Source of the DNA: Octopus bimaculoides
Lineage: Eukaryota
Assembly (NCBI RefSeq): GCF_001194135.2
Contig: NC_068989.1
Location: forward strand, 43,788,410-43,833,386
Direction: 5' to 3'
DNA: 44,977 nucleotides
Positions 1-38,997 of the stretch are shown one piece after another. A program made the translations under genes and the position numbers. The notes beneath the pieces are model-generated. The model was not told where the DNA came from, made no database searches, and was given only the letters and a program-made list of their open reading frames with translations. Within the stretch, counting starts at the first letter, position 1; every line of letters starts with the position of its first letter.

Positions 1-820
1 CACCACCACCACCACCACACCACCACCACACCACCACCACCACACAACCACCAGCACCAGCACCCCCACCCCCACCACTACCACAACCACCACATGACAA
101 CAGCAGCAACACTAATACTGCAATGACCAACATTGCCAGCACCCCCATGACCATCACCAAAATCCACCACCACTAAATACTACATCCATCACCACCACCA
201 CCAAATACTACCCAACCACGACAACCACTATCAAAACAATGACAATGACTACAACACAACTGCTTGCTGCCATCACTACTACCTCACTAATACTATTGCC
301 AATACCCATCATTACTAAATATCACTACCACCACCACCACCACCTTCTTTCCTACTACCAAATACCACCAAATATCACTACCACCAGTTACTATCAGCAT
401 CATCTCCACTACTACCACCACAACAATCACCACCATAATCACCACCACCACAATCACCACCACCACAATCAGCAGCAGCTGCAGAACCACCAACGCAACT
501 AGCAGCAGCAGCAGCAGAATCACCAGTACCATCTGCATTNNNNNNNNNNNNNNNNNNNNNNNNNNNNNNNNNNNNNNNNNNNNNNNNNNNNNNNNNNNNN
601 NNNNNNNNNNNNNNNNCCACCACCACCACCACCTTCTTTCCTACTACCAAATACCACCAAATATCACTACCACCACCACCACCACCAAATACCACTACTA
701 CAGGTTACCATCAACATCACCACCACAATTACCTCCCCCACACACAATCAGCACCACCACCACCACAACAACAACAACATAACATCAACAACAACAACAA
801 CAACAACAACAACAGCATCA
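1..820. repeat. (CAC)n/(CAA)n/(CAT)n low-complexity trinucleotide tract, interrupted by an N gap at 540-616
   Basis: Runs of caccaccac, caacaacaa and cagcagcag read directly. Confidence 0.95.
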
Positions 821-3385: not shown

Positions 3386-3790
3386 ATCCTATTTTGTATT
3401 AAATCTAATTTTGATGCAACATCTTTTTCTCCTCCATTTTCCTATAATTATTTATGGTATATTTATACCTATAACGATCTTTTTCAACTACTATTTTCAT
3501 ATTCTTACTACTTGCTCTGGCTGTTATTTATGAATATGATGAATCTTTATTAGAAATTATTCTTTTTTTCTTTTCTCTCTTTTTGGACCTCTCAAAAAGT
3601 TTGAATTGTTCTTTTTTGAACTTATTTTTTTAACTATATGTGTATATATATNNNNNNNNNNNNNNNNNNNNNNNNNNNNNNNNNNNNNNNNNNNNNNNNN
3701 NNNNNNNNNNNNNNNNNNNNNNNNNNNNNNNNNNNNNNNNNNNNNNNNNNNNNNNNNNNNNNNNNNNNNNNNNNNNNNNNNNNATATAGA

Positions 3791-4954: not shown

Positions 4955-6644
4955 TCAGGTCATCCCATAAGTTCTGTCCGAATTTTGAATAAAGAAAACA
5001 AGTGATCAAATGTTATATTTAATTGAAATTTAATCATCAAAATACTTTCCTTGATTATCTATGACTTCCTTCCATCTATTTACAAGCTTTTTAATCCCAT
5101 CAATGTAAAACTCTTTTGGTTTCCAAGCGAAGAATTCTGAAATGTCAGTTTTGACCTCTTCCTGGCTTGCAAAAGTTATGTCCCCAAATGATTCTGTAAA
5201 CTACAAAACAAATGATAGTCTGAAGGAGCAAGGTTGGGAGAATAAGGTGGATGAGGAATTTTTTCCCAACCAAGCTCTTCGATCTTCTGTGATGTGNNNN
5301 NNNNNNNNNNNNNNNNNNNNNNNNNNNNNNNNNNNNNNNNNNNNNNNNNNNNNNNNNNNNNNNNNNNNNNNNNNNNNNNNNNNNNNNNNNNNNNNNNNNN
5401 NNNNNNNNNNNNNNNNNNNNNNNNNNNNNNNNNNNNNNNNNNNNNNNNNNNNNNNNNNNNNNNNNNNNNNNNNNNNNNNNNNNNNNNNNNNNNNNNNNNN
5501 NNNNNNNNNNNNNNNNNNNNNNNNNNNNNNNNNNNNNNNNNNNNNNNNNNNNNNNNNNNNNNNNNNNNNNNNNNNNNNNNNNNNNNNNNNNNNNNNNNNN
5601 NNNNNNNNNNNNNNNNNNNNNNNNNNNNNNNNNNNNNNNNNNNNNNNNNNNNNNNNNNNNNNNNNNNNNNNNNNNNNNNNNNNNNNNNNNNNNNNNNNNN
5701 NNNNNNNNNNNNNNNNNNNNNNNNNNNNNNNNNNNNNNNNNNNNNNNNNNNNNNNNNNNNNNNNNNNNNNNNNNNNNNNNNNNNNNNNNNNNNNNNNNNN
5801 NNNNNNNNNNNNNNNNNNNNNNNNNNNNNNNNNNNNNNNNNNNNNNNNNNNNNNNNNNNNNNNNNNNNNNNNNNNNNNNNNNNNNNNNNNNNNNNNNNNN
5901 NNNNNNNNNNNNNNNNNNNNNNNNNNNNNNNNNNNNNNNNNNNNNNNNNNNNNNNNNNNNNNNNNNNNNNNNNNNNNNNNNNNNNNNNNNNNNNNNNNNN
6001 NNNNNNNNNNNNNNNNNNNNNNNNNNNNNNNNNNNNNNNNNNNNNNNNNNNNNNNNNNNNNNNNNNNNNNNNNNNNNNNNNNNNNNNNNNNNNNNNNNNN
6101 NNNNNNNNNNNNNNNNNNNNNNNNNNNNNNNNNNNNNNNNNNNNNNNNNNNNNNNNNNNNNNNNNNNNNNNNNNNNNNNNNNNNNNNNNNNNNNNNNNNN
6201 NNNNNNNNNNNNNNNNNNNNNNNNNNNNNNNNNNNNNNNNNAGGAGCTTATCATCAAACTCAGCTGGACATCCTGTTCAATCTTCATCTTCAAGGCTGAA
6301 ATCTCCACTTCTGAATTTTGCAAACCATCTTCTGTAAGTTCTTTCATTCAAGCATTCTTTGCCATAAATTGAGTGTGTTTCGAGTCGCTTCGGCTGCAGA
6401 GTTTCCTTTTTTGTACTCATAAAGCATTATGTGCCTTAAATGCTCTTTGAATACTTCCATGTTAGAAAGGGTTTGAATCAAAGAAATTTTAATTCTATTA
6501 TTCTGTAAAATGATATTTAATTAGTTTAAATGTACACAAATGCATAAAAATAATTTTTAATTCCATTAGACATTCTAAAATACTATTAAATTTCATTCAA
6601 TTTTAAAAAAGGTAAAATCGGACAGAACTTATGGGATGATCTGA
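4955..6644 (-). mobile_element. Mariner DNA transposon, both ends present, centre lost in the N gap 5297-6241
   Basis: TIR tcaggtcatcccataagttctgtccga at 4955 and its reverse complement ending at 6644 (1 mismatch in 27 bp); TA on both sides (4953-4954, 6645-6646). Confidence 0.93.
5030..6460 (-). pseudogene. Disrupted mariner (DD34D-type) transposase
   Basis: N-terminus MEVFKEHLRHIMLYEYKKGNSAAEATRN from 6460; C-terminus KIEELGWEKIPHPPYSPNLAPSDYHLF...EFYIDGIKKLVNRWKEVIDNQGKYFDD* ending at 5030; stops and frameshifts present. Confidence 0.9.
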
Positions 6645-6664
6645 TAGTTCCATGCATGTGTATA

Positions 6665-6907
6665 TATTCTTTATTCTTCTATTCTTTCACATGTTTCAAC
6701 CCTAAGGCTGTGGCCACACACACACACACACACACATATATAAACAATGGACCTCTTTCAGTTTCTGTCTTCCAAATCCACTCACAAGGCTTTGCTTGGT
6801 TTGGGGCTATAGTAAAAGGCACTTGCCCAAGGTGCGACATAGTGGGACTGAACCCAGAACCATGTAGTTTGGAAGCAAAATTCTTACCACACAGCCATGC
6901 CTGTGCC
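6665..6907 (-). mobile_element. SINE family A, internally deleted copy
   Basis: ctctttcagtttctgtc...cttaccacacagccatgcctgtgcct is the reverse complement of the A head. Confidence 0.85.
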
Positions 6908-6961
6908 TATTTTATTAATTTTATTTCTTTCTTTCTTTATTTATCTTTTCATCAGGAAAGA

Positions 6962-7110
6962 AAGCAATGCCCATGATTCTTTCACAGGCTTTTGAGACTA
7001 GCAGGAAAGAGGGAGGAAGGTTACCTCAAATGGGTTACCTGGCCTGAGTGCTTACAGCAGAGTGGATTCTGATAAAGATGTCTATGATGCCAAGTATTGG
7101 TGCCAAACTG
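6962..7110 (+). mobile_element. Fragment of the upstream segment of D-type (RTE-tailed) elements
   Basis: gcaatgcccatgattctttcacagg...cttacagcagagtggattctgat is similar to 37315-37430. Confidence 0.55.
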
Positions 7111-7225
7111 GGTGACAGACTGAGTCCACTATTTATGTAGATCATGACAGGATTTCAAGTTAAGAACTTAAAGAGCTGGAACAAATACTGCAAAACATTT
7201 AGTCTGCTAGTCTCTTCCAGAGAGA

Positions 7226-7448
7226 ATGTGTGAATGTATTAGACAGACAGACAGAAAGACGGATGGACGGATGGATGGATGGATGGAGAAAAAAGAGAAG
7301 AATAGGAAGAAAGACGAGGAGGAGGAGGGTGAGAAGAAGAAGAAGAAGAAGAAGACGACGACCGTGACGATGGCGGCAACGACGATGACGGAGGCGACGA
7401 CAAAGGCAACAACGGTGAGGAGGAGGCGGAGGAGGAGGTGGAGGAGGA
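7226..7448. repeat. Mixed purine-rich microsatellites (GACA, GGAT, GAG, AAG, ACG)
   Basis: Read directly; runs into an N gap. Confidence 0.9.
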
Positions 7449-7588
7449 NNNNNNNNNNNNNNNNNNNNNNNNNNNNNNNNNNNNNNNNNNNNNNNNNNNN
7501 NNNNNNNNNNNNNNNNNNNNNNNNNNNNNNNNNNNNNNNNNNNNNNNNNNNNNNNNNNNNNNNNNNNNNNNNNNNNNNNNNNNNNNNN

Positions 7589-8149
7589 AAGTCTTGTTTC
7601 ATGAAGACAATTTGTGTATAGTTCTGCAAATTATATTGATTCTAGAACGTCTATGCTGATGAGAACATGGATATTATTACGCAAGTATAACGTTAATGTT
7701 CGAAACTGCAGTCCATAGATAACTCTTTATTCTGTATATTTCTCATTTTGTCCTGTTCTGGCGTTTCGCGAAATTTTTCTGGAGAACATTATTTTTCTTT
7801 GTGGTTGGGTCGTTGATGACCTCATTCTAGCATATTGGATGTCCACTTAGTAGTCATCCCTTATACACATGTAATACAATTTTTTCTGAATTTTCAGATT
7901 TTTTTTTATATGCTAGGTCACTTGGTTTTAAATTGAATTAATATTCAATTTATCGCCCTATCTATTTAAATAATAATTTAAATAGTTATGCTCTCCAACT
8001 GGCAACATATACTGCCGTGAATTATTCTCTGCAGAATTGTTTCTGGAATTTTTGAGCGCCAGAGCTGAGGCATTTTGAAAAGCAGCCCCAATGTAATCGG
8101 TAGAACTATATGCAAGTCTTGTTTCATGAAGACAATTCGTGTATAGTTC
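7589..8149 (+). mobile_element. Non-coding hammerhead-containing repeat unit (525-bp period), retrozyme-like or Penelope pLTR-like
   Basis: 36-bp direct repeat at 7589-7624 and 8114-8149 (1 mismatch), internal intact hammerhead, many perfect hairpins, no recognisable ORF. Confidence 0.65.
7649..7720 (+). ncRNA. Intact type I hammerhead ribozyme, predicted cleavage after GUC at 7713
   Basis: Stem I GUCUAUG 7649-7655 / CAUAGAU 7714-7720; CUGAUGA 7656-7662; stem II GAACAU 7663-7668 / AUGUUC 7696-7701; GAAA 7702-7705; stem III palindrome ACUGCAGU; GUC triplet. Confidence 0.88.
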
Positions 8150-8154
8150 AGAGT

Positions 8155-8245
8155 TGATAAAATGAGACAAGTTGAACACTGGGGGTCAATCTTATTGACT
8201 TAGCCCCTCCCCCAAAATTACTAGCCTTGTGCCAAAATTTAAAAC
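8155..8245 (+). mobile_element. SINE family C, 3' fragment
   Basis: gataaaatgag...actgggggtcaat...gccttgtgccaaaattt matches the 3' half of 27585-27802. Confidence 0.65.
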
Positions 8246-8246
8246 T

Positions 8247-8525
8247 AATGTCTGTCTTCCATGCTGGCACGGGTTGCAGAGTTTGACAAGATCTGAAAAA
8301 CTGGAGGACTACATTGAACTACATCTACTTTGGCATGGTTTCAATGGCTGGATGCCCTTTCTAATGCCAATCACTTTACAGAGTGTATTAGGTGCCTTTT
8401 TTGTGGCATTGACACTAGTGAGGTCACTAGATAATTTACAAGACAAGAACCCTCAACCGAGTGGAGATGTAGTATTGAAGGAGGTGGTTTTAAGCTAGGT
8501 GTTGAGAGGTTAAAGTATGATATGA
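8247..8525 (-). mobile_element. D-type element (RTE-LINE-type 3' module with upstream segment)
   Basis: ccatgctggcacgggttg...ggctggatgccctttctaatgccaa...gagaggttaaagtatga; homologous to 14915-15256. Confidence 0.75.
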
Positions 8526-9029
8526 CATAACTTAAAAAGAAAAAATTAACTGCTATTTCTTGCAGGCCTAACGACCTTATAAATGTGCCTTTATTATTTA
8601 ATGAATTGATATTATTTAATGATTTTGTGTTTTGTCCAAGATTAAAACATTTAAGTTTCAACTACCTAGGCCATTAAGGCCTCTAAGCTGTAAATTGATC
8701 TTGATGATAAACTTCAATAAAGTATCAAACACTGATGAATTTTAATGAAAGTGCAATCCATTAATAATTTACTCAATATTCAATTAGTTTGGAGCAATTA
8801 TCTATGGAAATTTTGCAGCCACGAGGCAGATCAGTGGTTTATATGTTGCCAATGGTACAACATTGTGCTCAAGGCATAAAGCAGTCCCACTAAAATTTGA
8901 GTGATGCAGCTTGTTTGTTTATTTATTTATCTATCTATTTTTTAAGTGAAGAGGGGAAAGCAAGACATTTGTTTTTTGTGGGGTCTGGGGGCTGCAAACA
9001 GAAGGGCCATCCCAGGCAGTACACACTCT

Positions 9030-9200
9030 AGAATGAAGAAGACACGGACCAAATGCTATCAACAGAGAGGACTCTGCCAATGTTGACACCATAAGATGGG
9101 TGACTATGTCTACCACCCAAGTAAGCTGTGGTAGGATTTGAACTCAGAGAGCAAAGGCTTGGAACAAATCCTGCAAAGCATTCTAAACAATGCTCTGTCA
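9030..9200 (-). mobile_element. Degenerate tRNA-headed SINE with a C-like head and different body
   Basis: ggatttgaactcagag (B box on the minus strand) and aagcattctaaacaatgctct resemble family C heads. Confidence 0.45.
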
Positions 9201-9319
9201 ACTCTATCAATAGGCGAGACATATACATACATATACACTTACATACATAAACACACACAAATCCATACATACATACATACATACATACATATGTATACAC
9301 ACACACACACACATAGACA

Positions 9320-9485
9320 CAGATGTGGCTGTGTGATATGAAGCTTGCTTCTCAACCATATGGTTCCAGGTTCAGTCCCACTGCATAACACCTCAGGCAA
9401 GTGTTTTCTACTATAGCCTTGGGCTGACCAAAGCCTTGTGAATGGATCTGGTATCTACTAGGCAGAAACTGAAGGAAGCCTGTTG
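9320..9485 (+). mobile_element. SINE family A, left module only
   Basis: gtggctgtgtgatatgaagcttgc...gaaactgaaggaagcc. Confidence 0.8.
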
Positions 9486-9509
9486 ATTTTATATATGTAT
9501 ATACATATA

Positions 9510-9916
9510 TAGGAGTGGCTGTGTAGTAAGTGGCTGTTTGCTTACCAACCACATGGTTCTAGGTTCAGTCCCACACCATGGCACCTTGACAGGTATCTTC
9601 CACTATAGCCTCGGGCCAACTAAAGCCTTGTGAGTGGATTTGGTAGACAGAAACTGAAAGAACTCTGTCATATAAGTATCTATATGTATATATATATGTA
9701 TATGTATATATATATGTTTGTGTGTCTGCGTTTGTCCCTCCACCATCGCTTGACAACCGATGCTGGTGTGTTTACATCCCTGTAACTTACTGGTTTGGGA
9801 AAAGAGACTGATAGAATAAGTACTAGGCTTACAAAGAATAAGTCTTGGTGTCGATTTCTTCAACTAAAAGGTGGTGCTCCAGCATGACCACAGTCAAATG
9901 ACTGAAACAAATAAAA

Positions 9917-9920
<4 letters not shown>
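9510..9920 (+). mobile_element. SINE family A, full-length
   Basis: Head, internal TA repeat, right module and aaataaaagaata tail. Confidence 0.9.
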
Positions 9921-9968
<48 letters not shown>

Positions 9969-9969
9969 G

Positions 9970-10125
9970 ATGGGCTTCTTTCAGTTTCTGCCAACAATCA
10001 AATCCACTTACAAGGCTTTGATCAGCCTGGAGCTATAGTAGAAAACACTTACCTAAGGTGCTATGCAGTGAGATTGAACCGAGGACCATATAGTTAGAAA
10101 GCAAACTTTCTAACTCACAGCCACA
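9970..10125 (-). mobile_element. SINE family A, left module, inverted relative to 9510-9920
   Basis: gggcttctttcagtttc...aactcacagccaca. Confidence 0.85.
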
Positions 10126-11139
10126 ATTTCAAATTACATTATTTAATATTTCTATATACAGTACATTTTTGCTTGATTTTGATATCAGTTTCTTAACAGG
10201 GGTTTGAATCCTGGATGTGTACTCAGTCCCAGTTGCATTTGAACTTAGTTAAGGTGCTACATGATAGAATTGAACTTGAAACCAGGTGACTGAAAAAAGA
10301 TTTCCTACCCACACAACCATATTTGGTCCTATATGAATATTACAAAATGTTTCCTCTCTAAAGATGAGGTTAATAGTTCAAAAAATGATAATCTCATGAA
10401 CAACAACTCATCTCAGACATTTAGACATTTTGCATACATTACATTTGAAAGAAGAAACCCGGATAAAGTGGTCCACCATTCTAGCTCAGTGGATAAAAAC
10501 ATTTTTATTGACAGGATACTTAAGTATTAAATGGTTGACATTTTCTAAATGTTTCTCTAGAGAATGGCTTCTATAGAAAAGGTTTTAAATATCAGGAGAG
10601 TTTTTTTTTTATATATATGTATATATATGTTGGGTTTATATGAATGTTACTAGCTTGTTCTTGCTGTTGTTGTTGTACTTGTTATTGTGTAGCCTCTGGT
10701 CAGCTTGGACTGATCAATCCTACAAAATGCAGGTAATCGACAAAATGGCTAAATGTGAGCCATATATCTGGGTTTTTTTCCTCCTAGTTGTACCATGTCT
10801 TCACATAACTCAGGGCAGTACTGTACTTAAGTTTATGTTACTTTAAGATCATTGCAGTTCACTTGACGCATTGTAGTACAGGAGTAAAATAATAAATGAA
10901 ATGCTGAAAAATTTTCCAAAAACTCTATATTTCAGGCACAAAGGCCCACCTTCAGAAAGATACAGTCAAAGAAATGGGTGTCTATGCAGATCCTCCCATT
11001 TTGGACAGCTTGATCAATTCTGTGAAGTGGGTGGAATTCTTCACATACAGTGTTGACATACAGTGTTGACTTTCTTGCTAATGGACTGATTATATCCACA
11101 AGGAAGCGACTCAGTGGATGACATGCTTAACCTCTACAG

Positions 11140-11878
11140 CTCACTATACCTGGATGTATTAATAACAGTATAACAGTATTAATAACATGCACCAAGTATG
11201 GATTCAGGACATCTGTATACTGCAAGCCGACCTTCACTGGACAATACCTCAACTTCAATTCCCACCGTCGATACAGTGTAAAGAGAGGGATTGTTCAGTG
11301 CCTAAAACAGCGAGCAGAGAATATAACTAGTGATTGTGATACACACTACAAAGAAATGATCAAGCTCAATAACAATCTATTAAGTAACAACTACCCCAAA
11401 AACATACTATCCACTCCAATTATGAAGAAAAGAGAGGATGAAACCAATAAACTGTCCACAGTCTGTCTATCCTATGTGAAAGGCCTCTCCGAAAAGATAC
11501 AAAAGATATGCGGCCCATATAACATCAGGACAGTATTCAAGAGTAATAAACACTTCGCAAATATCTCCTTCGAGTAAAACCACCAATAGAAGAGAATATG
11601 ACCAAAGACTGCGTGTACTCTATCCCATGCAGTTGTGGTAGGTTATACAAAAGCAAAACATGTTGCCCCCTCAAAATAAGGGTAGACAACATCGCAAAGC
11701 TATGACACGAGGAGATATCGATAAATCAGGTATAGCTGATCATGTATGGAAAAATGGAGACCACCTCCCCCTGTGGGATGAAGTTAAAATAATAGACAGA
11801 GAACACCACTGGAAAATACGAAAACTAAAAGAAGCAGCACATATGCTGGGACTGAGTGCAGATATGAGTAGCATATAG
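11140..11878 (+). pseudogene. Penelope-type RT C-terminus and GIY-YIG endonuclease, frameshifted
   Basis: Open frame about 11188-11577, frameshifts near 11550 and 11690, then ORF 11660-11878; no Cys/His zinc-knuckle linker visible, which suggests the Poseidon/Penelope group. Confidence 0.85.
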
Positions 11879-12785: not shown

Positions 12786-13481
12786 NNNNNNNNNNNNNNN
12801 NNNNNNNNNNNNNNNNNNNNNNNNNNNNNNNNNNNNNNNNNNNNNNNNNNNNNNNNNNNNNNNNNNNNNNNNNNNNNNNNNNNNNNNNNNNNNNNNNNNN
12901 NNNNNNNNNNNNNNNNNNNNNNNNNNNNNNNNNNNNNNNNNNNNNNNNNNNNNNNNNNNNNNNNNNNNNNNNNNNNNNNNNNNNNNNNNNNNNNNNNNNN
13001 NNNNNNNNNNNNNNNNNNNNNNNNNNNNNNNNNNNNNNNNNNNNNNNNNNNNNNNNNNNNNNNNNNNNNNNNNNNNNNNNNNNNNNNNNNNNNNNNNNNN
13101 NNNNNNNNNNNNNNNNNNNNNNNNNNNNNNNNNNNNNNNNNNNNNNNNNNNNNNNNNNNNNNNNNNNNNNNNNNNNNNNNNNNNNNNNNNNNNNNNNNNN
13201 NNNNNNNNNNNNNNNNNNNNNNNNNNNNNNNNNNNNNNNNNNNNNNNNNNNNNNNNNNNNNNNNNNNNNNNNNNNNNNNNNNNNNNNNNNNNNNNNNNNN
13301 NNNNNNNNNNNNNNNNNNNNNNNNNNNNNNNNNNNNNNNNNNNNNNNNNNNNNNNNNNNNNNNNNNNNNNNNNNNNNNNNNNNNNNNNNNNNNNNNNNNN
13401 NNNNNNNNNNNNNNNNNNNNNNNNNNNNNNNNNNNNNNNNNNNNNNNNNNNNNNNNNNNNNNNNNNNNNNNNNNNNNNNNN

Positions 13482-15999: not shown

Positions 16000-16310
16000 A
16001 TACAATTGATGTTCTTACTGTTTTAGTTCATGTGGCACATGATGTTACTGATGGTGTCAAAGTTGGTGTTACATTTGATGTTGTTGTTGTTACAGTTGGT
16101 GTTACATTTGATGTTGCTGTTGTTACAATTGGTGTTACAATTGATACAACTGACAGAGTTACAGTTGGTGTTACAGTTACTGTTACAGTTGGTGTTACAG
16201 TTACTGTTACAGTTGACATTACTGATGGTATTACAGTTGGTGTTACAGTTGATGCTGCTGCCATTACAGTTAGTGTTATAGTGATTGCTGTTGTTATTGT
16301 TTTAATTGAT
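16000..16310. repeat. GTTACA/GTTGGT-based cryptic repeat
   Basis: Near-identical block repeated at 16559-16767. Confidence 0.85.
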
Positions 16311-16558
16311 GCTGCGGCTGATAGTAATGAAGATGAGGCAAAGGACGAAAAGTTCGATGTGGTGAAGGAAAGAGAATTTGAAATGCAATTATGTTAATTC
16401 GTGTTAAGAATTCTAATTATGGTATACTTAGAGCTAGAACTTTTCCTCTTTACCTCCTCTCTCTCTACCCCACTCCCTCTCTCCCCCCTCCCCCTCTCTC
16501 TCAGAAACTCTTCCTCATCACTGCCAACCACTGCCACCACCACCACAANNNNNNNNNN

Positions 16559-16767
16559 CAGTTACTGTTACAGTTGACATTACTGATGGTATTACAGTTG
16601 GTGTTACATTTGATGTTGCTGTTGTTACAGTTGGTGTTACATTTGATGTTGCTGTTGTTACAATTGGTGTTACAATTGATACAACTGACAGAGTTACAGT
16701 TGGTGTTACAGTTACTGTTACAGTTGGTGTTACAGTTACTGTTACAGTTGACATTACTGATGGTATT
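16559..16767. repeat. Second, circularly permuted copy of the GTTACA block (174-bp period), between two 10-N gaps
   Basis: gacattactgatggtatt at 16576 and 16750. Confidence 0.8.
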
Positions 16768-17477
16768 NNNNNNNNNNCACCACTGCTATTATTGTCCTCT
16801 TTCTCCTCATTATCATCGTTATTGTTATCATCATCAGTATCCTCATCATCATCCTCGTCACCATCATCATTCCCACCACCACTGCTGCAACCACTACCAC
16901 CACCACTACCACCATTATCATTGTAATCGTTATCATCATCATCATCATCATCACTATTACCACTACTGTTTTACTACCACAAATACCACCACCACTACTA
17001 ATATCATTATCATCATCATCATATAATGTCCAGATTAATCTTTACTTCATTGCATGTATTTGCATAATCATCAACATTGCCAAAGCTGTGTCGGAAAGAT
17101 AATACTTCCTTTTTTTTTTACTGAGTCGAAATGTCAGAGTCTACACCCTGCTGTAAAGAATAGATGTCGACATACTGAAACAAGGCCTCTGTTTATCTTT
17201 CATTTTCTGCCCCTGTCCTCCGCCCTATACCAATTATGATTGATTTATAACATAGGGACAAATTTAGTGGGAAAGATATAGCTGAATAGATTAGTTATTT
17301 ATTTCTCCAAACCTGGAAAGATGAACAGCAAATATGGCCCCAGGCATGATTTAAACAAAGATTGTAAAGGAGTATAATGAAATAGCACAGTGTGTTTTTC
17401 TTTGGTTCCTTTGCTTCTCATATTATTGGTTTCAAAATTTAGCACAAGGCTAGCAGTTTAAAGAAAAAAATAAAATA

Positions 17478-18185: not shown

Positions 18186-18204
18186 CTCACCACCTTAGTT
18201 CTTC

Positions 18205-18352
18205 CTATTGATTTCAAAATTTAGCACAAGGTCAACAATTTCAAAGGAAGGAATAAGTCAATTAAATTAACTCCAGTACTCAACTGGTACTTATTTTTAT
18301 CAACCCTTAAAGGATGAAAGGCAAAGTTGATCTCAGGGGAATTTGAACTCAG
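18205..18352 (-). mobile_element. SINE family C, 3' two-thirds
   Basis: caactggtacttatttttatc...aaggatgaaaggcaaag...atttgaactcag. Confidence 0.8.
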
Positions 18353-18533
18353 ATGTGGCTGTGCGGTAAGAAGCTTGCTTCCCAACAATATGGTTCCATG
18401 TTTTCAGTCCCACTGTGTGGCATCTGGGGCAAGTGTCTTCTACTAGAGCCTCGGGCCAACCAAAGCTTTGTGAGTGGATTTGGTAGACGGAAACTGAAAG
18501 AAGCCCATCGTATATATATATATATATATATAT
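18352..18533 (+). mobile_element. SINE family A, left module running into (TA)n and an N gap
   Basis: Standard A head and body. Confidence 0.88.
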
Positions 18534-19558: not shown

Positions 19559-19744
19559 AGAACATCACATCAGAAGTTTACAGAAATACGCTACTTAGAA
19601 TTATTAATTTAACTTCAAGAGTTGCTTCGGAGTAATTCTTTCGGAGAAGAAAAAATGTTTTTGTGTTGTTGACTTAATTGTAGTTTCAGGTTTACACTAA
19701 CTTGTTATATTGGAAGTCATCAGAGATCTATTAGGGGAGTATAT

Positions 19745-20150
19745 GGTATTGGTGGCGGTGGTGGTGGTGGTGGTGGCGGTTGTAGTGGTGATGGTGGTTA
19801 CAGGTGGTGACTGTTGCTGTGCTGGTAGTTATGACTGTAGTGGTAGTTGTTTTCATGGTGGTAGCAATGGCATTAGAGGCGGTGGTGGAGGTGGTTGTTG
19901 TAGTGGTGTTGCTGGTTGTAGTGGTGGCGATGATGGTAGTGGTGGTGGTCGCAGTGATGTTGGTGCTTGTGCTAGTATGGTTATTGGTGTACTATTGTTG
20001 TTGTTGTCTTTGGTGGGGGTGGGNNNNNNNNNNNNNNNNNNNNNNNNNNNNNTGGGGTGGGGTGGGGTGGGGTGGGGTGATAATGATGGTGGTGGCAGCA
20101 GTGACAAGGCTAGTGGTGATGGTAGTGGCAGTCATAGTAGTGGTAATGCA
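19745..20150. repeat. (GGT)n/(TTG)n low-complexity tract with an N gap
   Basis: Read directly. Confidence 0.9.
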
Positions 20151-21240: not shown

Positions 21241-21486
21241 ATAGCTATTTGGTAGAATGGTTATTCAGGAGAAAGGGGGTTGACTTATAGGAAGTGTGTA
21301 GACTTAAACATTGATTTTTTTAATGAAATATCTATCTTGTCTTATATATTACATCAGCTTGTATGCTGAAAAATGGCAACTGACACTGGTACTCTGTTCC
21401 ATCTAATCCAATCAATGGAACAGCTTACTTGTGAAATTAATGTGCAGATGGCTGAGCATGCCACAGACATGCATACTCTTAATGTA

Positions 21487-22718
21487 TCAGGCTGAGTAAA
21501 AAGTAAGCAATGTTTTGAAACATGAAATCCATCGCAATATATTTCAACAATGCAGAAATTTTATTCATCAAAGTAAGTGCCATTACTATCAACACACTTT
21601 TTCCAGTGAGTTACAAGTTTGTTTATTCCGGTGACATAAAAATCTGGAGCTCTGGAGCTGATGAACTCTTTGAATGCACTTTCAGCATCGGTTTGATTTT
21701 TGAACTCCTTCTCTTGCAGGAAACCATCAAGGTGCTTGAAAAAGTGGTAGTCGGTAGGAGAAAGGTCTGGGGAATAAATTGAGTGGGGAAGAACTTCATA
21801 GCCAAGTTCCCTCAACTTCTTGAGCATCATTAGTGAAATGTGTGGTCAAGATTGTCAGGAAGAATGATTGGTCCTCTTCTGTTGACCAATCTGGGATGGA
21901 GGAGTAGCAGATTTTCATTCATTTTGGCAATTTCATGGCAATATGTTTCTGCAGTAATGGTTTATCGAGATTTTTAGGAGTTACAGTGAATGAGTCCAGC
22001 AGTACACCACCAAACAGTCACCATAACCTTCTTTTTGAAGAGCTCAGGTTTAGGGAAGGTTTTCGGTGCTTCATTTTGGTCCAACCACTGCGAAGAACGT
22101 TTTTTATTATTGTACAGAATCCACTTTTTATTGCAAGTTACAATACAGTTGAGAAATGGATCAGTCTGGTTATGGAGAAGAAGCGATGAGCAAATTTTGT
22201 ATCTGTGCATTTTATGATTTTCATTCAAATCGTGTGGTACCCATTTGTCGAGCTTTTTGATTTTCTGATCGAAGTTCATTTGCCAGTTCTCAAGTGGTTT
22301 TACAAGGATCTTTCTCAATGACAGTTTTTAATTGACCGTCATTGATGATAGATGGACGTCCACTACACTCACCATCTTCAAGGCTCAGGTCTCCACTGCA
22401 AAATCATTTAAACCCTTTTTGAGCAGACCACTCACTAATGTTTCATTGATATTGCAAGCAATTTCAGCTGCTTTACGTCCTCTTTTGAAGTTGAATAGCA
22501 AAATTGCTGTAATATCACACTTTGATAGTACCATTTCGCATGATTGTAACAAAGGTGAAAAAAATATCAAAGTAAAAATATTGATACATATGGGCAAGTC
22601 TATGTTTGTTTTATCAGACAATTTTTTAAAAAATGTTTTTAAAAAATTCAAAACTCTGCAAAAGTCCAGTACAAAGTCTTCATGGTTCAAAACGTTGCTT
22701 ACTTTTTACTCAACCTAA
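21487..22718 (-). mobile_element. Full-length (1232 bp) decayed mariner, cecropia (Hsmar1-like) subfamily
   Basis: TIR tcaggctgagtaaaaagtaagcaatgttttgaa at 21487 and its reverse complement ending at 22718; TA TSDs at 21485-21486 and 22719-22720. Confidence 0.95.
21561..22545 (-). pseudogene. Mariner transposase pseudogene
   Basis: Motifs FNFKRGRKAAE, KKLDKWVPHDL, FLNCIVTCNKKWILY, KKVMVTVWW and YSPDLSPTDYHFFKHLD; first catalytic Asp replaced by Asn; frameshifts. Confidence 0.93.
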
Positions 22719-24142: not shown

Positions 24143-24713
24143 NNNNNNNNNNNNNNNNNNNNNNNNNNNNNNNNNNNNNNNNNNNNNNNNNNNNNNNNNN
24201 NNNNNNNNNNNNNNNNNNNNNNNNNNNNNNNNNNNNNNNNNNNNNNNNNNNNNNNNNNNNNNNNNNNNNNNNNNNNNNNNNNNNNNNNNNNNNNNNNNNN
24301 NNNNNNNNNNNNNNNNNNNNNNNNNNNNNNNNNNNNNNNNNNNNNNNNNNNNNNNNNNNNNNNNNNNNNNNNNNNNNNNNNNNNNNNNNNNNNNNNNNNN
24401 NNNNNNNNNNNNNNNNNNNNNNNNNNNNNNNNNNNNNNNNNNNNNNNNNNNNNNNNNNNNNNNNNNNNNNNNNNNNNNNNNNNNNNNNNNNNNNNNNNNN
24501 NNNNNNNNNNNNNNNNNNNNNNNNNNNNNNNNNNNGTGTTGTAGTGTGCCCCTATTTTCAAGGTTAGACCACTTTATTTTAATAGAACAATGAATGTAAA
24601 ACTAATTAAATAAAAATATAATATAACTAATTAGTTTTCACTAATCGTAATTAGTGAATCTTATTAAGGCAGCTATATATATTGTGCAAGTGATAGTTAA
24701 GAAACTTTATTAA

Positions 24714-25807: not shown

Positions 25808-26125
25808 AAGCCTAGTACTTATTCTATTGATCTCTTTTGCCAAACCGCTAAGTTACGGGGATGTAAACACACCAGTATCGGTTGTCAAGCGATGTTGGGG
25901 GGGACAAACACAGACACACAAACACATATATACACATACACATATATATATATATATACATATATACGACGGGCTTCTTTTAGTTTCCGTCTACCAAATC
26001 CACTCTCAAGGCTTTGGTCGGCCCGAGGCTATAGTAGAAGACACTTGCCCAAGGTGCCCCACAGTGGGGACTGAACCTGGAACCATGTGGTTCGTAAGCA
26101 AGCTACTTACCACACAGCCACTCCT
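25808..26125 (-). mobile_element. SINE family A, 3' end in an N gap
   Basis: Reverse complement of the A head, internal microsatellite and right module. Confidence 0.88.
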
Positions 26126-26429
26126 CCTGTTCAATTATTAATATTTTATATTTTATTTTCATCTCTATTTATTCAGTTATCATCCCCCAACTGTATCTTG
26201 TTAGAGAAAATGTGTGCATTTTGATTGGCATAAGTAATCAAAGTGTTATCAGAACTAATTCAATATGTCGCAGTTTTAGCCATGGACTCTAATCATAGTC
26301 ACATAATTATTTATTTAATGCAGTTGATTACCAAAGTCATTAGAGTGTCAGAGTAATATTTCTCCATGGTAATCATTTCTGCTCTCTGCACCCAGAGTTC
26401 AAATCTAACTGGGGTCAACTTTGCCTTAA

Positions 26430-27150
26430 TGGTTAGGGCATTTTTCTCACAGTCGTAAGCTTGTGAGTTTCAATTTCTGGCAATGCATTGTGTTCTTGAA
26501 CAAGACACTTTATTTCACATTGCTCCAGTCCACTCAGCTGCCAAAAATGAGTCGTACCTGTAATTCAAAGAGCTGGGCTTCGTCACATTCTCTGTCATGC
26601 TGCATCTACCAGAGAACTACATTAAGGATACATACACGTGTCTGTGGAGTGTTCAGCTACTTATTCTTCTATTTGTTTCAGTCATTTGACTGTGGCCATG
26701 CTGGAGCACCACCTTAAAAGGTTTTTTAGTTGAAGAAATTGGCCCCAAGATTTATTCTTTGTAAGTCTAGTACTTATTCAATCAATTTCTTTTGCTGAAC
26801 TGCTAAGTTATGGGTACATAAACATATTAATATCAGTTGTCAAGTGATGGTGGGTGGGGGCAAACATAGATACAAAGACATACACATAAACATATACATA
26901 TATAATGGGCTTCTTTCAGTTTCCGTCTACCAAATTCACTCACAAGGTTTTGGTCAGCCTGAGGCTATAGTAGAAGACACTAGCCCAAAGTATCATGCAG
27001 TGGGACTGAACCTGGAACCATGTGGTTGAGAAGCAAGCTTCTTAACACACAGCCATGCCTGTGCCTACCTGCATATTAATTTTATGAGCCAGCTATTCCA
27101 TTGATCAGATCAACTGGAACCCCTCACCATCCTAACCAATGAAGTGCCAG
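26430..27150 (+). mobile_element. SINE family B (variant i) interrupted by a SINE A
   Basis: ...ggagtgttcagctactt (to about 26657) resumes as acctgcatattaatttt...actggaaccc (from about 27067). Confidence 0.8.
26658..27066 (-). mobile_element. SINE family A, full-length, nested in SINE B
   Basis: Complete head-to-tail reverse complement. Confidence 0.88.
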
Positions 27151-27584: not shown

Positions 27585-27802
27585 GGATAAGTGAGCTGAC
27601 TGAATTGTTAGCATGCCGAGCAAAATGCTTAGAGGCATTTTGTCTGTCTGCATGTCCTGAGTTCAAATTCTGCCATGGTCGACTTTACCTTTCATCCTTT
27701 TGGGCATCGATAGAATAAGTACCAGTTAACCACTGGGGTCAATGTAATTGCTTTAATCCCTTCCCCCAAAATTGCTGGCCTTGTGCCAACATTTGAAATC
27801 AA
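27585..27802 (+). mobile_element. SINE family C, full-length
   Basis: gagctgactgaattgttagcatgccgag head; ctgagttcaaattc; ggtcgactttacctttcatccttttggg core; tail gccttgtgccaacatttgaaatcaat. Confidence 0.87.
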
Positions 27803-27819
27803 TGTATACATACACAACT

Positions 27820-28140: not shown

Positions 28141-28524
28141 TTCAGTTTATTAGACTGTGGCCATGCTGGGGCACTGTCTTGAAGAATTTTTTAGGAGAAT
28201 CACTCAACACCAATAATCATTTTTTTCTTTAAACCTGGTACTTATTCTATTGGTCTCTTTGCTGAACTGCTAAGTTGTAGGGATGTAAACACACCAACAC
28301 CAGTTGTTAAGCTCGTGGTGGGGGACAAACACAGACACAAAAACACACACATGCATGCATGCACATATATATATATGATAAGCTTATTTCAGTTTCTTCC
28401 TATTAAATCCACTCACAAGGCTTTGGTTGGCCCTAAGCTAATGTAGAAGACACTTGCCCAAGATGCCACACTGTGGGAATGAACCTGGAACCATGTGGTT
28501 GGGAAGCAAACTTCTTACCACAAC
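28141..28524 (-). mobile_element. SINE family A, directly abutting the previous copy in inverted orientation
   Basis: ttcagtttattagactgtggccatgctggg...aaacttcttaccac. Confidence 0.85.
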
Positions 28525-29779
28525 CATGTTTGTGTCTATGTCTTTGTTCTATAAGACAGTAAGAAATGGTTGTTTAAGGGTGATTTGCTGTTGGAAAGTT
28601 GTACTTCTTTGGCTGGGATTAGAAAAGTACTTTAATGTAGGGTATATTTGTGCCCTTTATAGGAAGAGAACACATATCAGGAAAGGTATTTTTCTGGCAC
28701 TGTAAAGGAAGCTAAGAACTGAAAGTTTTGGCTACATTAAAAAATGGGCAGTCGTTATCAAAAGACATGGAGAGATGTTAAGGTCAAGAATTTATAAAGT
28801 GTTTGGTGATTTTAGCAGTATTGTTCATCAGATGTGAAAATGTGAATTGTGGTTATATTTTCATAAAATATATAATCTTTGTATTGTAACAGTGTTGAAT
28901 GAAATTAGGTTGTGAATAACATGTGAGTGATGATTGAGTTATTGTATTGATAGAGTAAAAGTTCAAGGTAAAATTCATGAAAACACTAATGGATAAAAAA
29001 GAAGCTTCCGATGTAGCAATCAAGCTGATTAGTGGTGAATGGTCCCTGAAGACAGGTTGCTCTGTCATATTTCCAAAAGGCCTATTTTATAAAGAAAAAA
29101 AAAACCATGGGGCAATACATAACATTTGCTTTTGTGACGGGTCTTGAAAACAAGAGACCATTGTTGCAGGATGTAAATGAAATGATCTGGAGTAGGTTTG
29201 GCTTTAAGAGAAGTGATACTAGTGGTCGCAAAAAACAAGTTAAGAGATATCTTTTAGTTTTTTTTAACCATTTGGAGATGGAGCCTCATTTGGAGTTTCA
29301 GTGCCAAGAAGATGGAGCCCTTTTCACCAGCCCTACAGAGGGCACGGACTTATTTTTCAAAACCAATATAATAAAATAAAGTAATTACTTTACATATATA
29401 AAACTATATATATTCAGGTAAGAAATTGAATGAACTAATACAATCATCTTTGTCATTTGGCTTTTTGGCTGATAGATCAGCCCTGTCATCTCCTAAGGGT
29501 TAAACAAAGTAAATGAATTCATGAAATTTTAGATGCTTTACATATTTGTACTGAAAACAGAAGTAAACTTAATTTAGATCACTTTAAAACTGAAAGTTTG
29601 TAATATAAAACCAGGGGTGGCCTCAAGTGAGTTGATATCAAAAGGGTTAGACCATGTATTCATTGCTCATCAGGCAATTGTGCTACAATTAAGTACAACT
29701 TCTCATCACTTGTTAGCATCTATGGCTTAGTAATGTGCCATGCTTTTGCTAATTGTTTTAGATGCCTACAAAGTTACAA

Positions 29780-32452: not shown

Positions 32453-32838
32453 TTTTACTTTTTTACTTACTTCAGTCATTTGACTGTGGCCATGCTGGAA
32501 CACCACCTTCAAGAGTTTTAGTCGAACAAATCAACTCTAGGACTTATTCTTTGTAAGCCTAGTATTTATTCTTATCGATCTCTTTTGCTGAGCCACTAAG
32601 CTACAAGGCCATAATCCCACCAGCACCGGTTGTCAAGCAATGGTGGTGGGGGGGGGGTGAACACATACACACACATGCACAAATATATACATATATTTAC
32701 AATGGGCTTCTTTCAGTTTCCGTCTCCAAATCCACTCATAAGGCTGTGGTCAGCCCAAGGATACAGTAGAAGACACTTGCCCAAGGTGTGATGCAGTGGA
32801 ACTGAACCCACAACCATGTGGTTGGAAAGCAAGCTTCT
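32453..32838 (-). mobile_element. SINE family A, full-length
   Basis: ctcttttactttt tail through cttaccacacagccacgcc head. Confidence 0.88.
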
Positions 32839-33139
32839 TACCACACAGCCACGCCTATGACTGCATACATAGTTATTTCACTATACTCACTTTGCTAATA
32901 TCCCTGACAAAAGGATGCATATCACAATAATCTCATTTTCTATTCTCTTGTAAGCTTTGAAGCTTATCCCACATAAGGTAAATGCAGATCTCTTATTCCA
33001 TGTGTTATTGCAATTGCTGAACCATCAGACAATTTGTTGAAGGAGAAAGAACAACAAAGTCATTGGTTGTAGTTCAGTGATTTTTTTTGGATAAGTGCAA
33101 ATGTAAGCAAGCACACAGACAATGACATACAGACAGACA

Positions 33140-33177
<38 letters not shown>

Positions 33178-33419
33178 TGCATGCATGAGCACGTGTGTGT
33201 GCATGTGTGTGTGTGTGTGTGTGTATGAGTGTGTATGTTTGTATGTATATTTGTATATCATCATTGTCATTATCGTCATTATTGTTTTAAAATGTACTTA
33301 TAATATCTACTGTTTCTACCTACCATGTACACTCACAAAGCTTAAGTCAAACCTGGGGCTACAGCAGAAGGAACTGAACCTGGAACTATTTGGTTAGGAA
33401 CTGTTCTACTCAACCACAT

Positions 33420-35115: not shown

Positions 35116-35152
<37 letters not shown>

Positions 35153-35305
35153 CATATATACGACAGGCTTCTTTCAGTTTCCGTCTACCAAATCCACTCA
35201 CAAGGCTTTGGTCGGCCCGAGGCTATAGTAGAAGACACTTGCCCAAGGTGCAACACAGTAGGACTGAACCCAGAACCAGGTGGTTGGTAAGCAAGCTACT
35301 TACCA
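34885..35305 (-). mobile_element. SINE family A, full-length young copy
   Basis: CpGs retained (gactgcggcc...gcaccgcctttagtcgagcaaatcgacc); tail ctcttttactcttttactc. Confidence 0.92.
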
Positions 35306-35321
35306 CACAGCCACTCCTGTG

Positions 35322-38914: not shown

Positions 38915-38959
<45 letters not shown>

Positions 38960-38997
38960 TATATATATACATATATATATATATATGTGTGTGTATA

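What the first reader, a model, noticed from the sequence alone, without database searches (positions are those of the whole stretch)
7649..7720. Fully intact type I hammerhead ribozyme outside any coding element
Every conserved core nucleotide is present (CUGAUGA, GAAA, GUC). Stem I has 7 bp (one G-U) and stem II has 6 perfect bp with a G10.1-C11.1 pair, extended by an inner hairpin capped by a GCAA (GNRA) tetraloop. Stem III is the palindrome ACUGCAGU, which could fold as 2 bp plus a tetraloop or pair between two molecules. Most neighbouring repeats are heavily mutated, so this perfection implies a young insertion or selection. Palindromic stem III type I hammerheads are established in Penelope-like elements and animal non-LTR retrozymes.
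Basis: partly seen in the sequence, partly recalled or inferred. Interest (0 to 1): 0.82.

Follow-up and report, generated by a model that had tools for sequence, protein, structure and literature searches.

The report
Hammerhead ribozyme in a small retroelement
The window really does contain a complete type I hammerhead self-cleaving RNA motif, and it sits inside a roughly 525-bp non-coding mobile repeat of the already known Penelope-like / animal "retrozyme" kind, so it is a sound but ordinary find.

Summary
Positions 7649-7720 (+) contain a full type I hammerhead: helix I of 7 bp, CUGAUGA, helix II of 6 bp extended by a hairpin with a GCAA loop, GAAA, a palindromic helix III (ACUGCAGU), and C17 at 7713. 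Shuffles and decoy cores predict about 1e-4 to 1e-5 motifs of this quality per window, which is still roughly one to several per gigabase-sized genome. Rfam Hammerhead_1 aligns over its full length but scores only 22.6 bits, below the gathering score of 34, because of a 31-nt insertion in loop II.

The context supports a real element. The motif lies in a non-coding, 33% GC unit of 525 bp whose first 36 nt (7589-7624) recur at 8114-8149 (35/36 identical). The copy ends exactly at the base of a 47-nt hairpin. No RT or GIY-YIG coding sequence occurs within about 3.5 kb downstream or 1.3 kb upstream.

My best reading is a 1.07-unit copy of a non-LTR retrozyme, a non-autonomous derivative of Penelope-like elements. 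Its hammerhead would cleave as a dimer in multimeric transcripts. This lone copy is probably inert.

No other family copies could be retrieved, so covariation is untested. I class it as a new member of a known kind, of modest interest.

The parts
7649..7720 (+). Complete type I hammerhead ribozyme motif (helix I open, helices II and III closed)
   Evidence: Sequence read; pairings checked; the only descriptor hit in the window; RF00163 full-length alignment at 22.6 bits, E=8e-4 in a local search.
7649..7655 (+). Helix I, 5' strand (GUCUAUG). Pairs with 7714-7720 (CAUAGAU): 7 bp, with the outermost pair G-U.
7656..7662 (+). Catalytic core, C3-A9 (CUGAUGA)
7663..7701 (+). Extended helix II. The basal 6 bp are GAACAU/AUGUUC (G10.1-C11.1). 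A 27-nt insert forms an irregular inner hairpin capped by a GCAA tetraloop.
   Evidence: Fold of the 39-nt segment, -7.3 kcal/mol. The insert is the reason for the low Rfam score (31 nt against 6 in the model).
7702..7713 (+). Core G12-A14 (GAA); helix III A15.1-U16.1 and C15.2-G16.2 with loop UGCA (palindrome ACUGCAGU, 7705-7712); C17 at 7713. Predicted cleavage between 7713 and 7714.
   Evidence: In a cofold of two 72-nt motifs, the palindrome forms an 8-bp intermolecular helix III (-37.9 against 2 x -16.0 kcal/mol).
7714..7720 (+). Helix I, 3' strand (CAUAGAU)
7589..8113 (+). One 525-bp non-coding repeat unit that carries the hammerhead. It is 33% GC with no protein-domain signal. The true 5' end is hidden by the assembly gap.
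   Evidence: Period of 525 nt from the terminal repeat; Pfam six-frame scan negative. The circularly permuted unit folds at -140.4 kcal/mol, against -102.6 +/- 6.5 for dinucleotide shuffles, z = -5.8. No second ribozyme on either strand.
7589..7624 (+). Left copy of the terminal direct repeat. It starts at the first base after the N gap, so it may extend further left.
   Evidence: 35/36 identical to 8114-8149
8114..8149 (+). Right copy of the terminal direct repeat. It extends the copy past one unit length, either as a Penelope-type 'tail' or as an overrun of reverse transcription.
   Evidence: Its length falls within the 30-40 bp reported for the PLE tail signature (PMC8557442, PMC11167929).
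8103..8149 (+). 47-nt hairpin whose 3' base is the last base of the element. It is a candidate site for initiation of reverse transcription.
   Evidence: Fold of 8085-8165: -16.6 kcal/mol, z = -2.2. Similarity to other interspersed repeats begins at 8147-8156.
7449..7588 (.). Assembly gap (140 N) that hides the 5' junction of the element
7241..7448 (.). Purine-rich microsatellite tract ((AGAC)n, (GGAT)n, (AGA)n, (GAG)n) flanking the gap on the left. It may be the insertion target.
   Evidence: PLEs are reported to favour microsatellite targets (PMC8557442). The link to this element is inferred only.
8150..8251 (+). Right flank: an old, 5'-truncated SINE-like repeat, not part of the element
   Evidence: Copies at 40236-40339 (-), 27709-27805 (+) and 18212-18310 (-) are 73-80% identical, and their consensus continues upstream where this copy stops.

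Best explanation
This is a genuine type I hammerhead ribozyme carried by a small non-coding retroelement of the animal non-LTR retrozyme kind, meaning a non-autonomous derivative of Penelope-like elements (PLEs). Here it is present as a single copy of 1.07 unit lengths.

Proposed mechanism. Steps 1 to 4 are inferred from the known biology of this family and are not shown here.
1. Master copies elsewhere in the genome, arranged head to tail, are transcribed into multimeric RNA.
2. Helix III of one motif has only 2 bp, but its sequence ACUGCAGU is palindromic. Two hammerheads can therefore pair to form an 8-bp helix III, a double hammerhead, and each cleaves after its C17.
3. The resulting 525-nt monomers carry 5'-OH and 2',3'-cyclic phosphate ends. 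A host tRNA ligase (RtcB) circularises them into a highly base-paired circular RNA.
4. The reverse transcriptase / GIY-YIG endonuclease of an autonomous PLE copies this circular or multimeric RNA into the genome.

What the sequence itself shows.
- The ends of the insertion do not coincide with the hammerhead cleavage site.
- The copy is longer than one unit: the first 36 nt or more recur at the end.
- The template was therefore not a linear cleaved monomer. It was a circle or an uncleaved multimer, copied for slightly more than one turn, starting at the base of the 8103-8149 hairpin.

The copy in this window has only one hammerhead and no partner within 45 kb. It is most likely a young, inert offspring copy.
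For: - All core nucleotides and three helices are present in type I topology.
- Expected chance hits are about 1e-4 to 1e-5 per window.
- Five metagenome matches to the core-plus-helix-III strings all lack helices I and II. That is what chance matches look like.
- RF00163 aligns over its full length, and its consensus also has an 8-nt palindromic helix III.
- Two isolated motifs cofold with an 8-bp intermolecular helix III. The dimer is 5.9 kcal/mol more stable than two monomers.
- The 36-nt terminal redundancy is 35/36 identical with a period of 525 nt.
- The element ends exactly at the base of a hairpin and abuts an older truncated repeat.
- The unit is non-coding and 33% GC. As a circle it is far more structured than shuffles, z = -5.8.
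- Its size and GC content fit published retrozymes: 150-450 bp and below 45-50% GC in PMC7229834; 51-972 bp with frequent monomers in 10.64898/2026.07.22.740005.
- A 30-40 bp tail is a PLE signature (PMC8557442, PMC11167929).
- Short palindromic helix III motifs that act as dimers are described in PMC4209133.
Against: - No second copy of the unit or the hammerhead could be found in the window or in the searchable collections. Multi-copy status and covariation are therefore untested.
- The Rfam score is below gathering (22.6 against 34), and whole-window scans miss the motif.
- The monomeric hammerhead fold is not the minimum-free-energy fold.
- In a modelled full-length tandem dimer, the double hammerhead does not appear in the MFE structure.
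- The left repeat copy is cut by an assembly gap, so the 5' junction, any target-site duplication and the true length of the redundancy are unknown.
- No autonomous PLE was seen in the stretch scanned. The rest of the window was not scanned by profile.
- The host organism was not identified.
Confidence: 0.72

Rival explanations
1. It is a remnant of an autonomous Penelope-like element: a solo or 5'-truncated pseudo-LTR with its usual hammerhead and 30-40 bp tail, rather than a dedicated non-autonomous retrozyme.
For: PLE pseudo-LTRs carry hammerheads of this type, and most occur genome-wide as single motifs from truncated copies (PMC4209133). The 36-bp terminal repeat matches the PLE tail length (PMC8557442, PMC11167929). 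The assembly gap on the left could hide more sequence.
Against: No RT or GIY-YIG signal appears in any frame of 6300-11200. The 489 bp between the two repeat copies are non-coding. The head-to-tail redundancy therefore belongs to the 525-bp unit itself, not to a pLTR-ORF-pLTR arrangement.
Confidence: 0.17
2. It is a chance hammerhead-like motif in AT-rich, repeat-rich DNA, with no catalytic or evolutionary meaning.
For: Extrapolated to a genome of gigabase size, one to several motifs of this stem quality are expected by chance. The Rfam score is sub-threshold, and scaled to the whole window its E-value is about 0.5. No homologues were found.
Against: The per-window expectation is only 1e-4 to 1e-5. 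True chance matches to the core strings have no helices. The motif also has the G10.1-C11.1 pair, a fully palindromic 8-nt helix III and a GNRA-capped helix II. It sits inside a unit with independent mobile-element hallmarks: terminal redundancy, an end at a hairpin base, and strong RNA structure.
Confidence: 0.07
3. It is a host-domesticated ribozyme that acts at this locus, for example by processing an intronic or untranslated transcript, as described for some amniote hammerheads.
For: The motif is intact, while the neighbouring interspersed repeats are 67-83% identical to one another.
Against: Its intactness is explained by youth (1 difference in 36 nt between the repeat copies). As a monomer the active fold is disfavoured. 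No gene context or orthologous conservation is available, and the surroundings are interspersed repeats and microsatellites.
Confidence: 0.04

Closest known systems
Metazoan non-LTR retrozymes: short tandem repeats with type I hammerheads, expressed as circular RNAs (Cervera & de la Pena 2020, PMC7229834; Li et al. 2026 preprint, 10.64898/2026.07.22.740005)
   Same: A type I hammerhead lies in a non-coding, low-GC unit of a few hundred bp. Helix III has 2 bp capped by a palindromic tetraloop, as described for invertebrate motifs. The unit is predicted to form a highly structured circle. Monomeric offspring copies are reported to be common. There are no LTR, PBS or PPT features and no ORF.
   Different: Only about 1.07 units and one hammerhead are present here, not a tandem array. 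The 525-bp unit is longer than the 150-450 bp of the first report, though it falls within the 51-972 bp range of the 2026 survey. Helix II is unusually long (39 nt), and no loop 1 / loop 2 contact is recognisable. Expression and circularity were not tested.
Hammerheads in the pseudo-LTRs of Penelope-like elements (Cervera & de la Pena 2014, PMC4209133; the Lunse, Weinberg & Breaker 2017 dimer study, known to me only from reference lists and memory)
   Same: The motif is type I with a small palindromic helix III, a conserved G10.1-C11.1 pair, a longer than usual helix II, and a predicted need to act as a dimer. The terminal 36-bp redundancy falls within the PLE tail range of 30-40 bp (PMC8557442, PMC11167929). 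A microsatellite lies next to the insertion.
   Different: There is no RT/GIY-YIG ORF next to it. It lacks the unpaired nucleotide between A9 and G10.1 that is typical of minimal PLE hammerheads. Helix I has 7 bp rather than 4-5. A real helix III with a tetraloop is present.
Rfam RF00163, Hammerhead_1
   Same: All 45 model positions align, every conserved core base matches, and the model consensus also has an 8-nt palindromic helix III.
   Different: The score is 22.6 bits against a gathering score of 34, because loop II is 31 nt where the model has 6. Standard Rfam annotation would not report this motif.
Newt satellite 2 and Schistosoma Sm-alpha hammerhead repeats
   Same: These are animal type I hammerheads in repeats of about 330 bp, with a weak helix III and dimer-dependent cleavage (as summarised in PMC7229834 and PMC4209133).
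   Different: There is no sequence similarity. No convincing Pol III A/B box pair is present in the unit. Helix II is much longer, and the classical loop-loop nucleotides are not evident.
Plant LTR retrozymes (PMC4918200)
   Same: Both are non-autonomous retroelements that use hammerheads to produce circular RNA intermediates.
   Different: The plant elements carry type III hammerheads inside real LTRs of several hundred bp, with PBS and PPT and high GC. None of these features is present here.

Membership tests
Hammerhead ribozyme, type I | Conserved core: C3 U4 G5 A6 N7 G8 A9, G12 A13 A14, the A15.1-U16.1 pair, and H17 (not G) at the cleavage site | tested here: met
   CUGAUGA at 7656-7662, GAA at 7702-7704, A7705-U7712, C7713
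Hammerhead ribozyme, type I | Three helices radiating from the core, with helix I open-ended and helices II and III closed by loops | tested here: met
   Helix I 7 bp, helix II 6 bp plus extension, helix III 2 bp plus a UGCA loop
Hammerhead ribozyme, type I | Score at or above the Rfam RF00163 gathering threshold | tested here: not met
   22.6 bits against 34. Detected only when an 82-nt stretch is searched, and absent from whole-window scans. The shortfall comes from the 31-nt loop II insertion, not from the core.
Hammerhead ribozyme, type I | Helices supported by compensatory changes among homologues, with an invariant core | not testable with these tools
   No homologue in the window, metagenome contigs, viral contigs or prokaryotic genomes. 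The source genome is not searchable here.
Hammerhead ribozyme, type I | Site-specific self-cleavage 3' of position 17 | not testable with these tools
   This needs in vitro transcription of monomer and dimer constructs.
Hammerhead ribozyme, type I | Tertiary contact between helix I (loop 1 or bulge) and loop II that gives fast cleavage at physiological Mg2+ | tested here: inconclusive
   With flanks included, helix I does not extend beyond 7 bp and shows no bulge. Loop II is replaced by a long hairpin. Some mollusc retrozyme hammerheads also lack the classical contact nucleotides (PMC7229834).
Metazoan non-LTR retrozyme | Type I hammerhead inside a short, non-coding, low-GC repeat unit | tested here: met
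   525-bp period, 33% GC, no Pfam domain in six frames
Metazoan non-LTR retrozyme | Head-to-tail tandem arrangement with two or more hammerheads | tested here: not met
   Only 1.07 units and one hammerhead at this locus. Published surveys count such monomers as derivatives of the family (10.64898/2026.07.22.740005). The assembly gap limits what can be seen on the left.
Metazoan non-LTR retrozyme | Multi-copy family in the host genome | not testable with these tools
   Only this 45-kb window is available. Exact-product look-ups of two ORFs from the unit found nothing.
Metazoan non-LTR retrozyme | Expressed as linear and circular monomeric RNA | not testable with these tools
   Only a prediction is available: the circular unit folds at -140.4 kcal/mol, z = -5.8 against shuffles.
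Penelope-like element (autonomous) | Single ORF encoding a telomerase-like RT and a GIY-YIG endonuclease, flanked by pseudo-LTRs | tested here: not met
   No RT or GIY-YIG hit in six frames of 6300-11200 at E<=1
Penelope-like element (insertion signature) | A 30-40 bp 'tail' extension that repeats the other end of the insertion unit | tested here: inconclusive
   A 36-bp repeat, 35/36 identical, fits the reported length. However, the left copy starts at the assembly gap and may be longer, so a partial tandem cannot be excluded.
Plant LTR retrozyme | Type III hammerheads within long terminal repeats, plus PBS and PPT | tested here: not met
   The topology is type I, and the repeat copies do not contain the hammerhead.
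tRNA-derived SINE with hammerhead (Sm-alpha type) | Internal Pol III A and B boxes | tested here: not met
   There is one A-box-like string and no B box, apart from a 2-mismatch match inside the hammerhead core itself.

The most novel reading that the evidence does not exclude
The unit represents an undescribed retrozyme family in this host lineage. I suspect a cephalopod mollusc, from memory of its SINE-like repeats, but I did not verify this. Its hammerhead has an extended helix II capped by a GNRA loop and escapes Rfam thresholds. If so, covariance-model censuses of animal hammerheads, such as the 235 Hammerhead_1 hits reported for the giant squid (PMC6962438), would systematically miss a class of active circular-RNA-producing elements.
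Probability: 0.4. Interest if true: 0.4.

Novelty: new member of a known kind. Interest (0 to 1): 0.3.

Why it matters
If confirmed, this adds one family to the large catalogue of animal type I hammerheads linked to Penelope-like elements and retrozymes. It may come from a lineage where such elements have not been described in detail.

Two points have some practical value. First, the motif scores below Rfam's threshold only because of a long helix II insertion, so model-based counts of eukaryotic hammerheads are likely underestimates. Second, the copy carries a readable record of how it was made. It is longer than one unit, its ends do not coincide with the ribozyme cleavage site, and its 3' end lies at the base of a hairpin. 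This fits reverse transcription from a circular or multimeric RNA with a defined internal start, which is a current question in PLE and retrozyme biology (PMC11167929).

It does not open a new category.

Tried and rejected
- **Rfam at gathering thresholds and whole-window E-value mode:** no hammerhead hit. The roughly 100 sub-threshold miRNA matches lie on microsatellites and are false positives.
- **Search for further copies in the window:** none found, by pattern with 3 mismatches, by a gapped core pattern (whose two hits on the minus strand at 19.3-19.7 kb are unrelated and lack helices), or by BLAST with word size 7.
- **Public collections:** the metagenome scan returned 5 matches to core plus helix III, all without helices I and II, so all are chance. 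Viral contigs and prokaryotic genome contigs returned nothing.
- **Exact-product look-ups** of two ORFs from the unit, tried in the hope of reaching other assemblies of the same genome: nothing on record.
- **Host identification** through the mariner-like ORF: only anonymous ENA proteins at 50-65% identity, so the organism remains unidentified. On that evidence I ran no further search on spurious ORFs of the unit.
- **Second ribozyme** on either strand of the unit, as in viroid-like or deltavirus-like agents: none.
- **Helitron reading of the 3' hairpin:** rejected. The hairpin is long and AT-rich, and the end is ...TAGTTC, not CTRR.
- **tRNA-SINE reading:** rejected, because there is no A/B box pair.
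- **Defining the 5' junction from a possibly split SINE:** unresolved. In another copy (18200-18533, reverse complement) two SINE parts are adjacent, whereas here they lie 1.25 kb apart around the element. Both families are abundant, however, so the adjacency may be coincidental.
- **MFE fold of a modelled full-length tandem dimer:** it does not show the double hammerhead. Only the isolated motifs do.

Full report
**1. The observation**

The sequence at 7649-7720 (+) reads GUCUAUG / CUGAUGA / GAACAU-(27 nt)-AUGUUC / GAAA / C-UGCA-G / U C / CAUAGAU. I checked each pairing by script.
- Helix I is 7649-7655 paired with 7714-7720: 7 bp, with only the outermost pair (G7649-U7720) a wobble.
- Helix II is 7663-7668 paired with 7696-7701: six Watson-Crick pairs, starting with G10.1-C11.1.
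- The 27-nt insert in helix II folds into an irregular inner hairpin closed by C-G around a GCAA tetraloop.
- Helix III is A7705-U7712 and C7706-G7711 around UGCA, so ACUGCAGU is a perfect 8-nt palindrome.
- C17 is C7713, so cleavage falls between 7713 and 7714.

Every statement in the finding is correct.

**2. Chance**

A hammerhead descriptor finds only this site in the window. It requires CUGANGA, GAAA, A15.1-U16.1, H17 and contiguous stems.
- On 56 Mb of Markov sequence with the window's dinucleotide content, it gave 0.91 hits/Mb at helix I >=4 and II >=3, 0.14/Mb at (5,4), and none at (6,5) or (7,6).
- The hit rate falls about 6.4-fold for each extra pair in both stems. That implies about 0.0035/Mb at the observed (7,6), or roughly 1.6e-4 per window, and about ten times less if helix III must be short.
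- As a control on the real sequence, 600 permuted decoy cores gave 0.042, 0.010, 0.0017 and 0 hits per core at the same four settings.

The motif is therefore very unlikely by chance in one window. A multi-gigabase genome would still produce roughly one to several such motifs. The motif alone is not decisive.

**3. Covariance models**

- Rfam at gathering thresholds reports only a tRNA in the window.
- A 201-nt local search lists only RAGATH-1-hammerhead, at 21.7 bits.
- An 82-nt search lists RF00163 Hammerhead_1 over all 45 model positions, at 22.6 bits against a gathering score of 34, E = 8e-4 for that small search. Scaled to the whole window, that E-value is about 0.5.
- All core positions match, and the model consensus also has an 8-nt palindromic helix III. 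The shortfall comes from 31 nt in loop II where the model has 6.
- Whole-window E-value mode does not recover the motif. It is dominated by microsatellite false positives.

**4. Folding**

- As a monomer, the hammerhead fold costs -10.5 kcal/mol. The minimum-free-energy fold is -16.0 kcal/mol and pairs the core CUG with the CAG of helix III.
- Two isolated motifs cofold at -37.9 kcal/mol, against 2 x -16.0. They form an 8-bp intermolecular helix III and helices I formed in trans. This is the double-hammerhead arrangement described for newt, Schistosoma, PLE and axolotl motifs (PMC4209133, PMC7229834).
- In a modelled full-length tandem dimer, the MFE structure does not show the double hammerhead. 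Thermodynamic prediction alone therefore does not establish it.

**5. Context**

- The window is an AT-rich, gap-ridden eukaryotic draft. It has 14 runs of N, many microsatellites, several SINE-like families, and mariner remnants.
- The hammerhead lies 60 nt to the right of a 140-N gap.
- The 36 nt at 7589-7624 recur at 8114-8149 (35/36 identical), giving a period of 525 nt.
- Nothing else in the window resembles the 7625-8113 interior.
- From 8147-8156 rightwards the sequence belongs to older interspersed repeats. Their other copies are 67-80% identical and extend further 5' than this copy does. The element therefore ends at 8149/8150.
- That end is exactly the 3' base of a 47-nt hairpin at 8103-8149.
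- The left flank beyond the gap is a purine-rich microsatellite tract.
- Six-frame Pfam scanning of 6300-11200 finds no reverse transcriptase or GIY-YIG domain.
- No second ribozyme occurs on either strand of the unit.
- There is no Pol III A/B box pair.
- The unit is 33% GC. Folded as a circle it reaches -140.4 kcal/mol, against -102.6 +/- 6.5 for dinucleotide shuffles, z = -5.8.

**6. Interpretation**

These features match the animal non-LTR retrozymes. Those are short, non-coding, low-GC repeats with a type I hammerhead whose 1-2 bp helix III is capped by a palindromic loop. They are expressed as monomeric linear and circular RNAs, and monomeric copies are dispersed in the genome (PMC7229834; 10.64898/2026.07.22.740005). 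The 2026 preprint argues that they are non-autonomous derivatives of Penelope-like elements.

A 30-40 bp 'tail' that repeats the other end of the unit is a reported PLE insertion signature. It is attributed to internal initiation of reverse transcription (PMC8557442, PMC11167929). The 36-bp redundancy here fits that length, with the caveat that its left copy is cut by the gap.

Two things follow directly from the sequence. First, the ends of the insertion are not at the ribozyme cleavage site. Second, the copy is longer than one unit. The template was therefore a circular or uncleaved multimeric RNA, copied for slightly more than one turn from a start at the hairpin base. It was not a linear cleaved monomer.

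The rest of the life cycle is inferred from the family: transcription of tandem masters, dimeric cleavage, RtcB circularisation, and PLE-mediated integration.

**7. Age and selection**

The two repeat copies differ at 1 of 36 positions, whereas neighbouring repeats are 17-33% diverged from one another. At such low divergence, a motif with about 43 constrained positions often stays intact by chance. Intactness therefore indicates youth, not selection at this locus. With no partner hammerhead within 45 kb, this copy is probably inert.

**8. Rivals**

- **Solo or truncated PLE pseudo-LTR.** This is the main alternative. It is disfavoured because the redundancy belongs to a non-coding 525-bp unit with no ORF in between.
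- **Pure chance.** This is unlikely given the per-window expectation, the extra features (G10.1-C11.1, a fully palindromic helix III, a GNRA cap), and the independent mobile-element hallmarks. Real chance matches from metagenomes lacked helices altogether.
- **A domesticated host ribozyme.** This has no support.

**9. What is missing**

No homologous copy could be retrieved. The window has none. The searchable collections are microbial, viral or metagenomic and returned only chance matches or nothing. Exact-product look-ups failed.

The host was not identified. I suspect a cephalopod from memory of the SINE-like repeats, but that is untested. In the giant squid, 235 Rfam Hammerhead_1 hits and Penelope elements have been reported (PMC6962438). 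I found no paper describing hammerhead repeats or retrozymes in cephalopods.

**10. Verdict**

This is a real type I hammerhead, correctly read by the first stage. It sits in a young 1.07-unit copy of a retrozyme / PLE-derived non-coding retroelement. I class it as a new member of a known kind. The notable variation is a long helix II that keeps the motif under Rfam's threshold. Interest is modest.

Noticed in passing
window 41105-41179 (-): A tRNA-Thr(AGU)-like sequence (Rfam tRNA 48.3 bits; also found by ARAGORN) lies among SINE-like repeats. It could be a real tRNA gene or the head of a tRNA-derived SINE.
   Followed up: no
window 21300-22700 (-) and about 6300-6450 (-): Degraded mariner/Mos1-type transposon remnants. 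The ORF at 21974-22318 matches Transposase_1 (PF01359) proteins at 50-65% identity. An HTH_48 fragment lies near 6300-6450.
   Followed up: partly
window 6703-6916, 25925-26138, 26861-27074, 28334-28547, 32657-32870, 35119-35332 and others: An abundant SINE-like family (core GGGCTTCTTTCAGTTTCCGTCTACCAAATCCACTCACAAGG...) whose copies are 60-83% identical, often preceded by (CA)n or (TA)n tracts. From memory it resembles an octopus SINE, but I did not verify this.
   Followed up: partly
window 6736-6897 and 8147-8244, compared with 18200-18533 (reverse complement): In the copy near 18.3 kb, two SINE-like parts lie 45 nt apart. Around the hammerhead element the same two parts are 1.25 kb apart. 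The element, together with the microsatellite tract, may have inserted into a composite SINE, but coincidental adjacency cannot be excluded.
   Followed up: partly
window 8103-8149 (+): A 47-nt hairpin (11-bp outer stem and 5-bp inner stem) ends exactly at the 3' boundary of the hammerhead element. Its 3' arm and loop form the 36-nt terminal repeat.
   Followed up: yes
window 41653-42069: A tandem array with a 25-nt period (ACATGTTTACCACAGTTCATAAA-like units), about 9 or more units in two blocks, close to the tRNA-like sequence.
   Followed up: no
window 16013-16780 and 19727-20142: Long imperfect 9-12-nt (trinucleotide-based) repeats that give long low-complexity ORFs (GT/GV-rich and H-rich). 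They are probably minisatellites rather than genes.
   Followed up: no
whole window, e.g. 33143-33224, 38931-39020, 44395-44482: In E-value mode Rfam lists about 100 sub-threshold miRNA and snoRNA matches (mir-3149, mir-297, mir-1277 and others). All lie on (CA)n, (TA)n or (GT)n microsatellites and are false positives.
   Followed up: yes
window 540-616, 3652-3783, 5297-6241, 7449-7588, 12786-13481, 24143-24535, 39043-39388 and 7 more: There are fourteen runs of N (10-945 nt), often next to microsatellites. The long 'inverted repeats' and 'ORFs' reported across them are artefacts of N matching N.
   Followed up: yes
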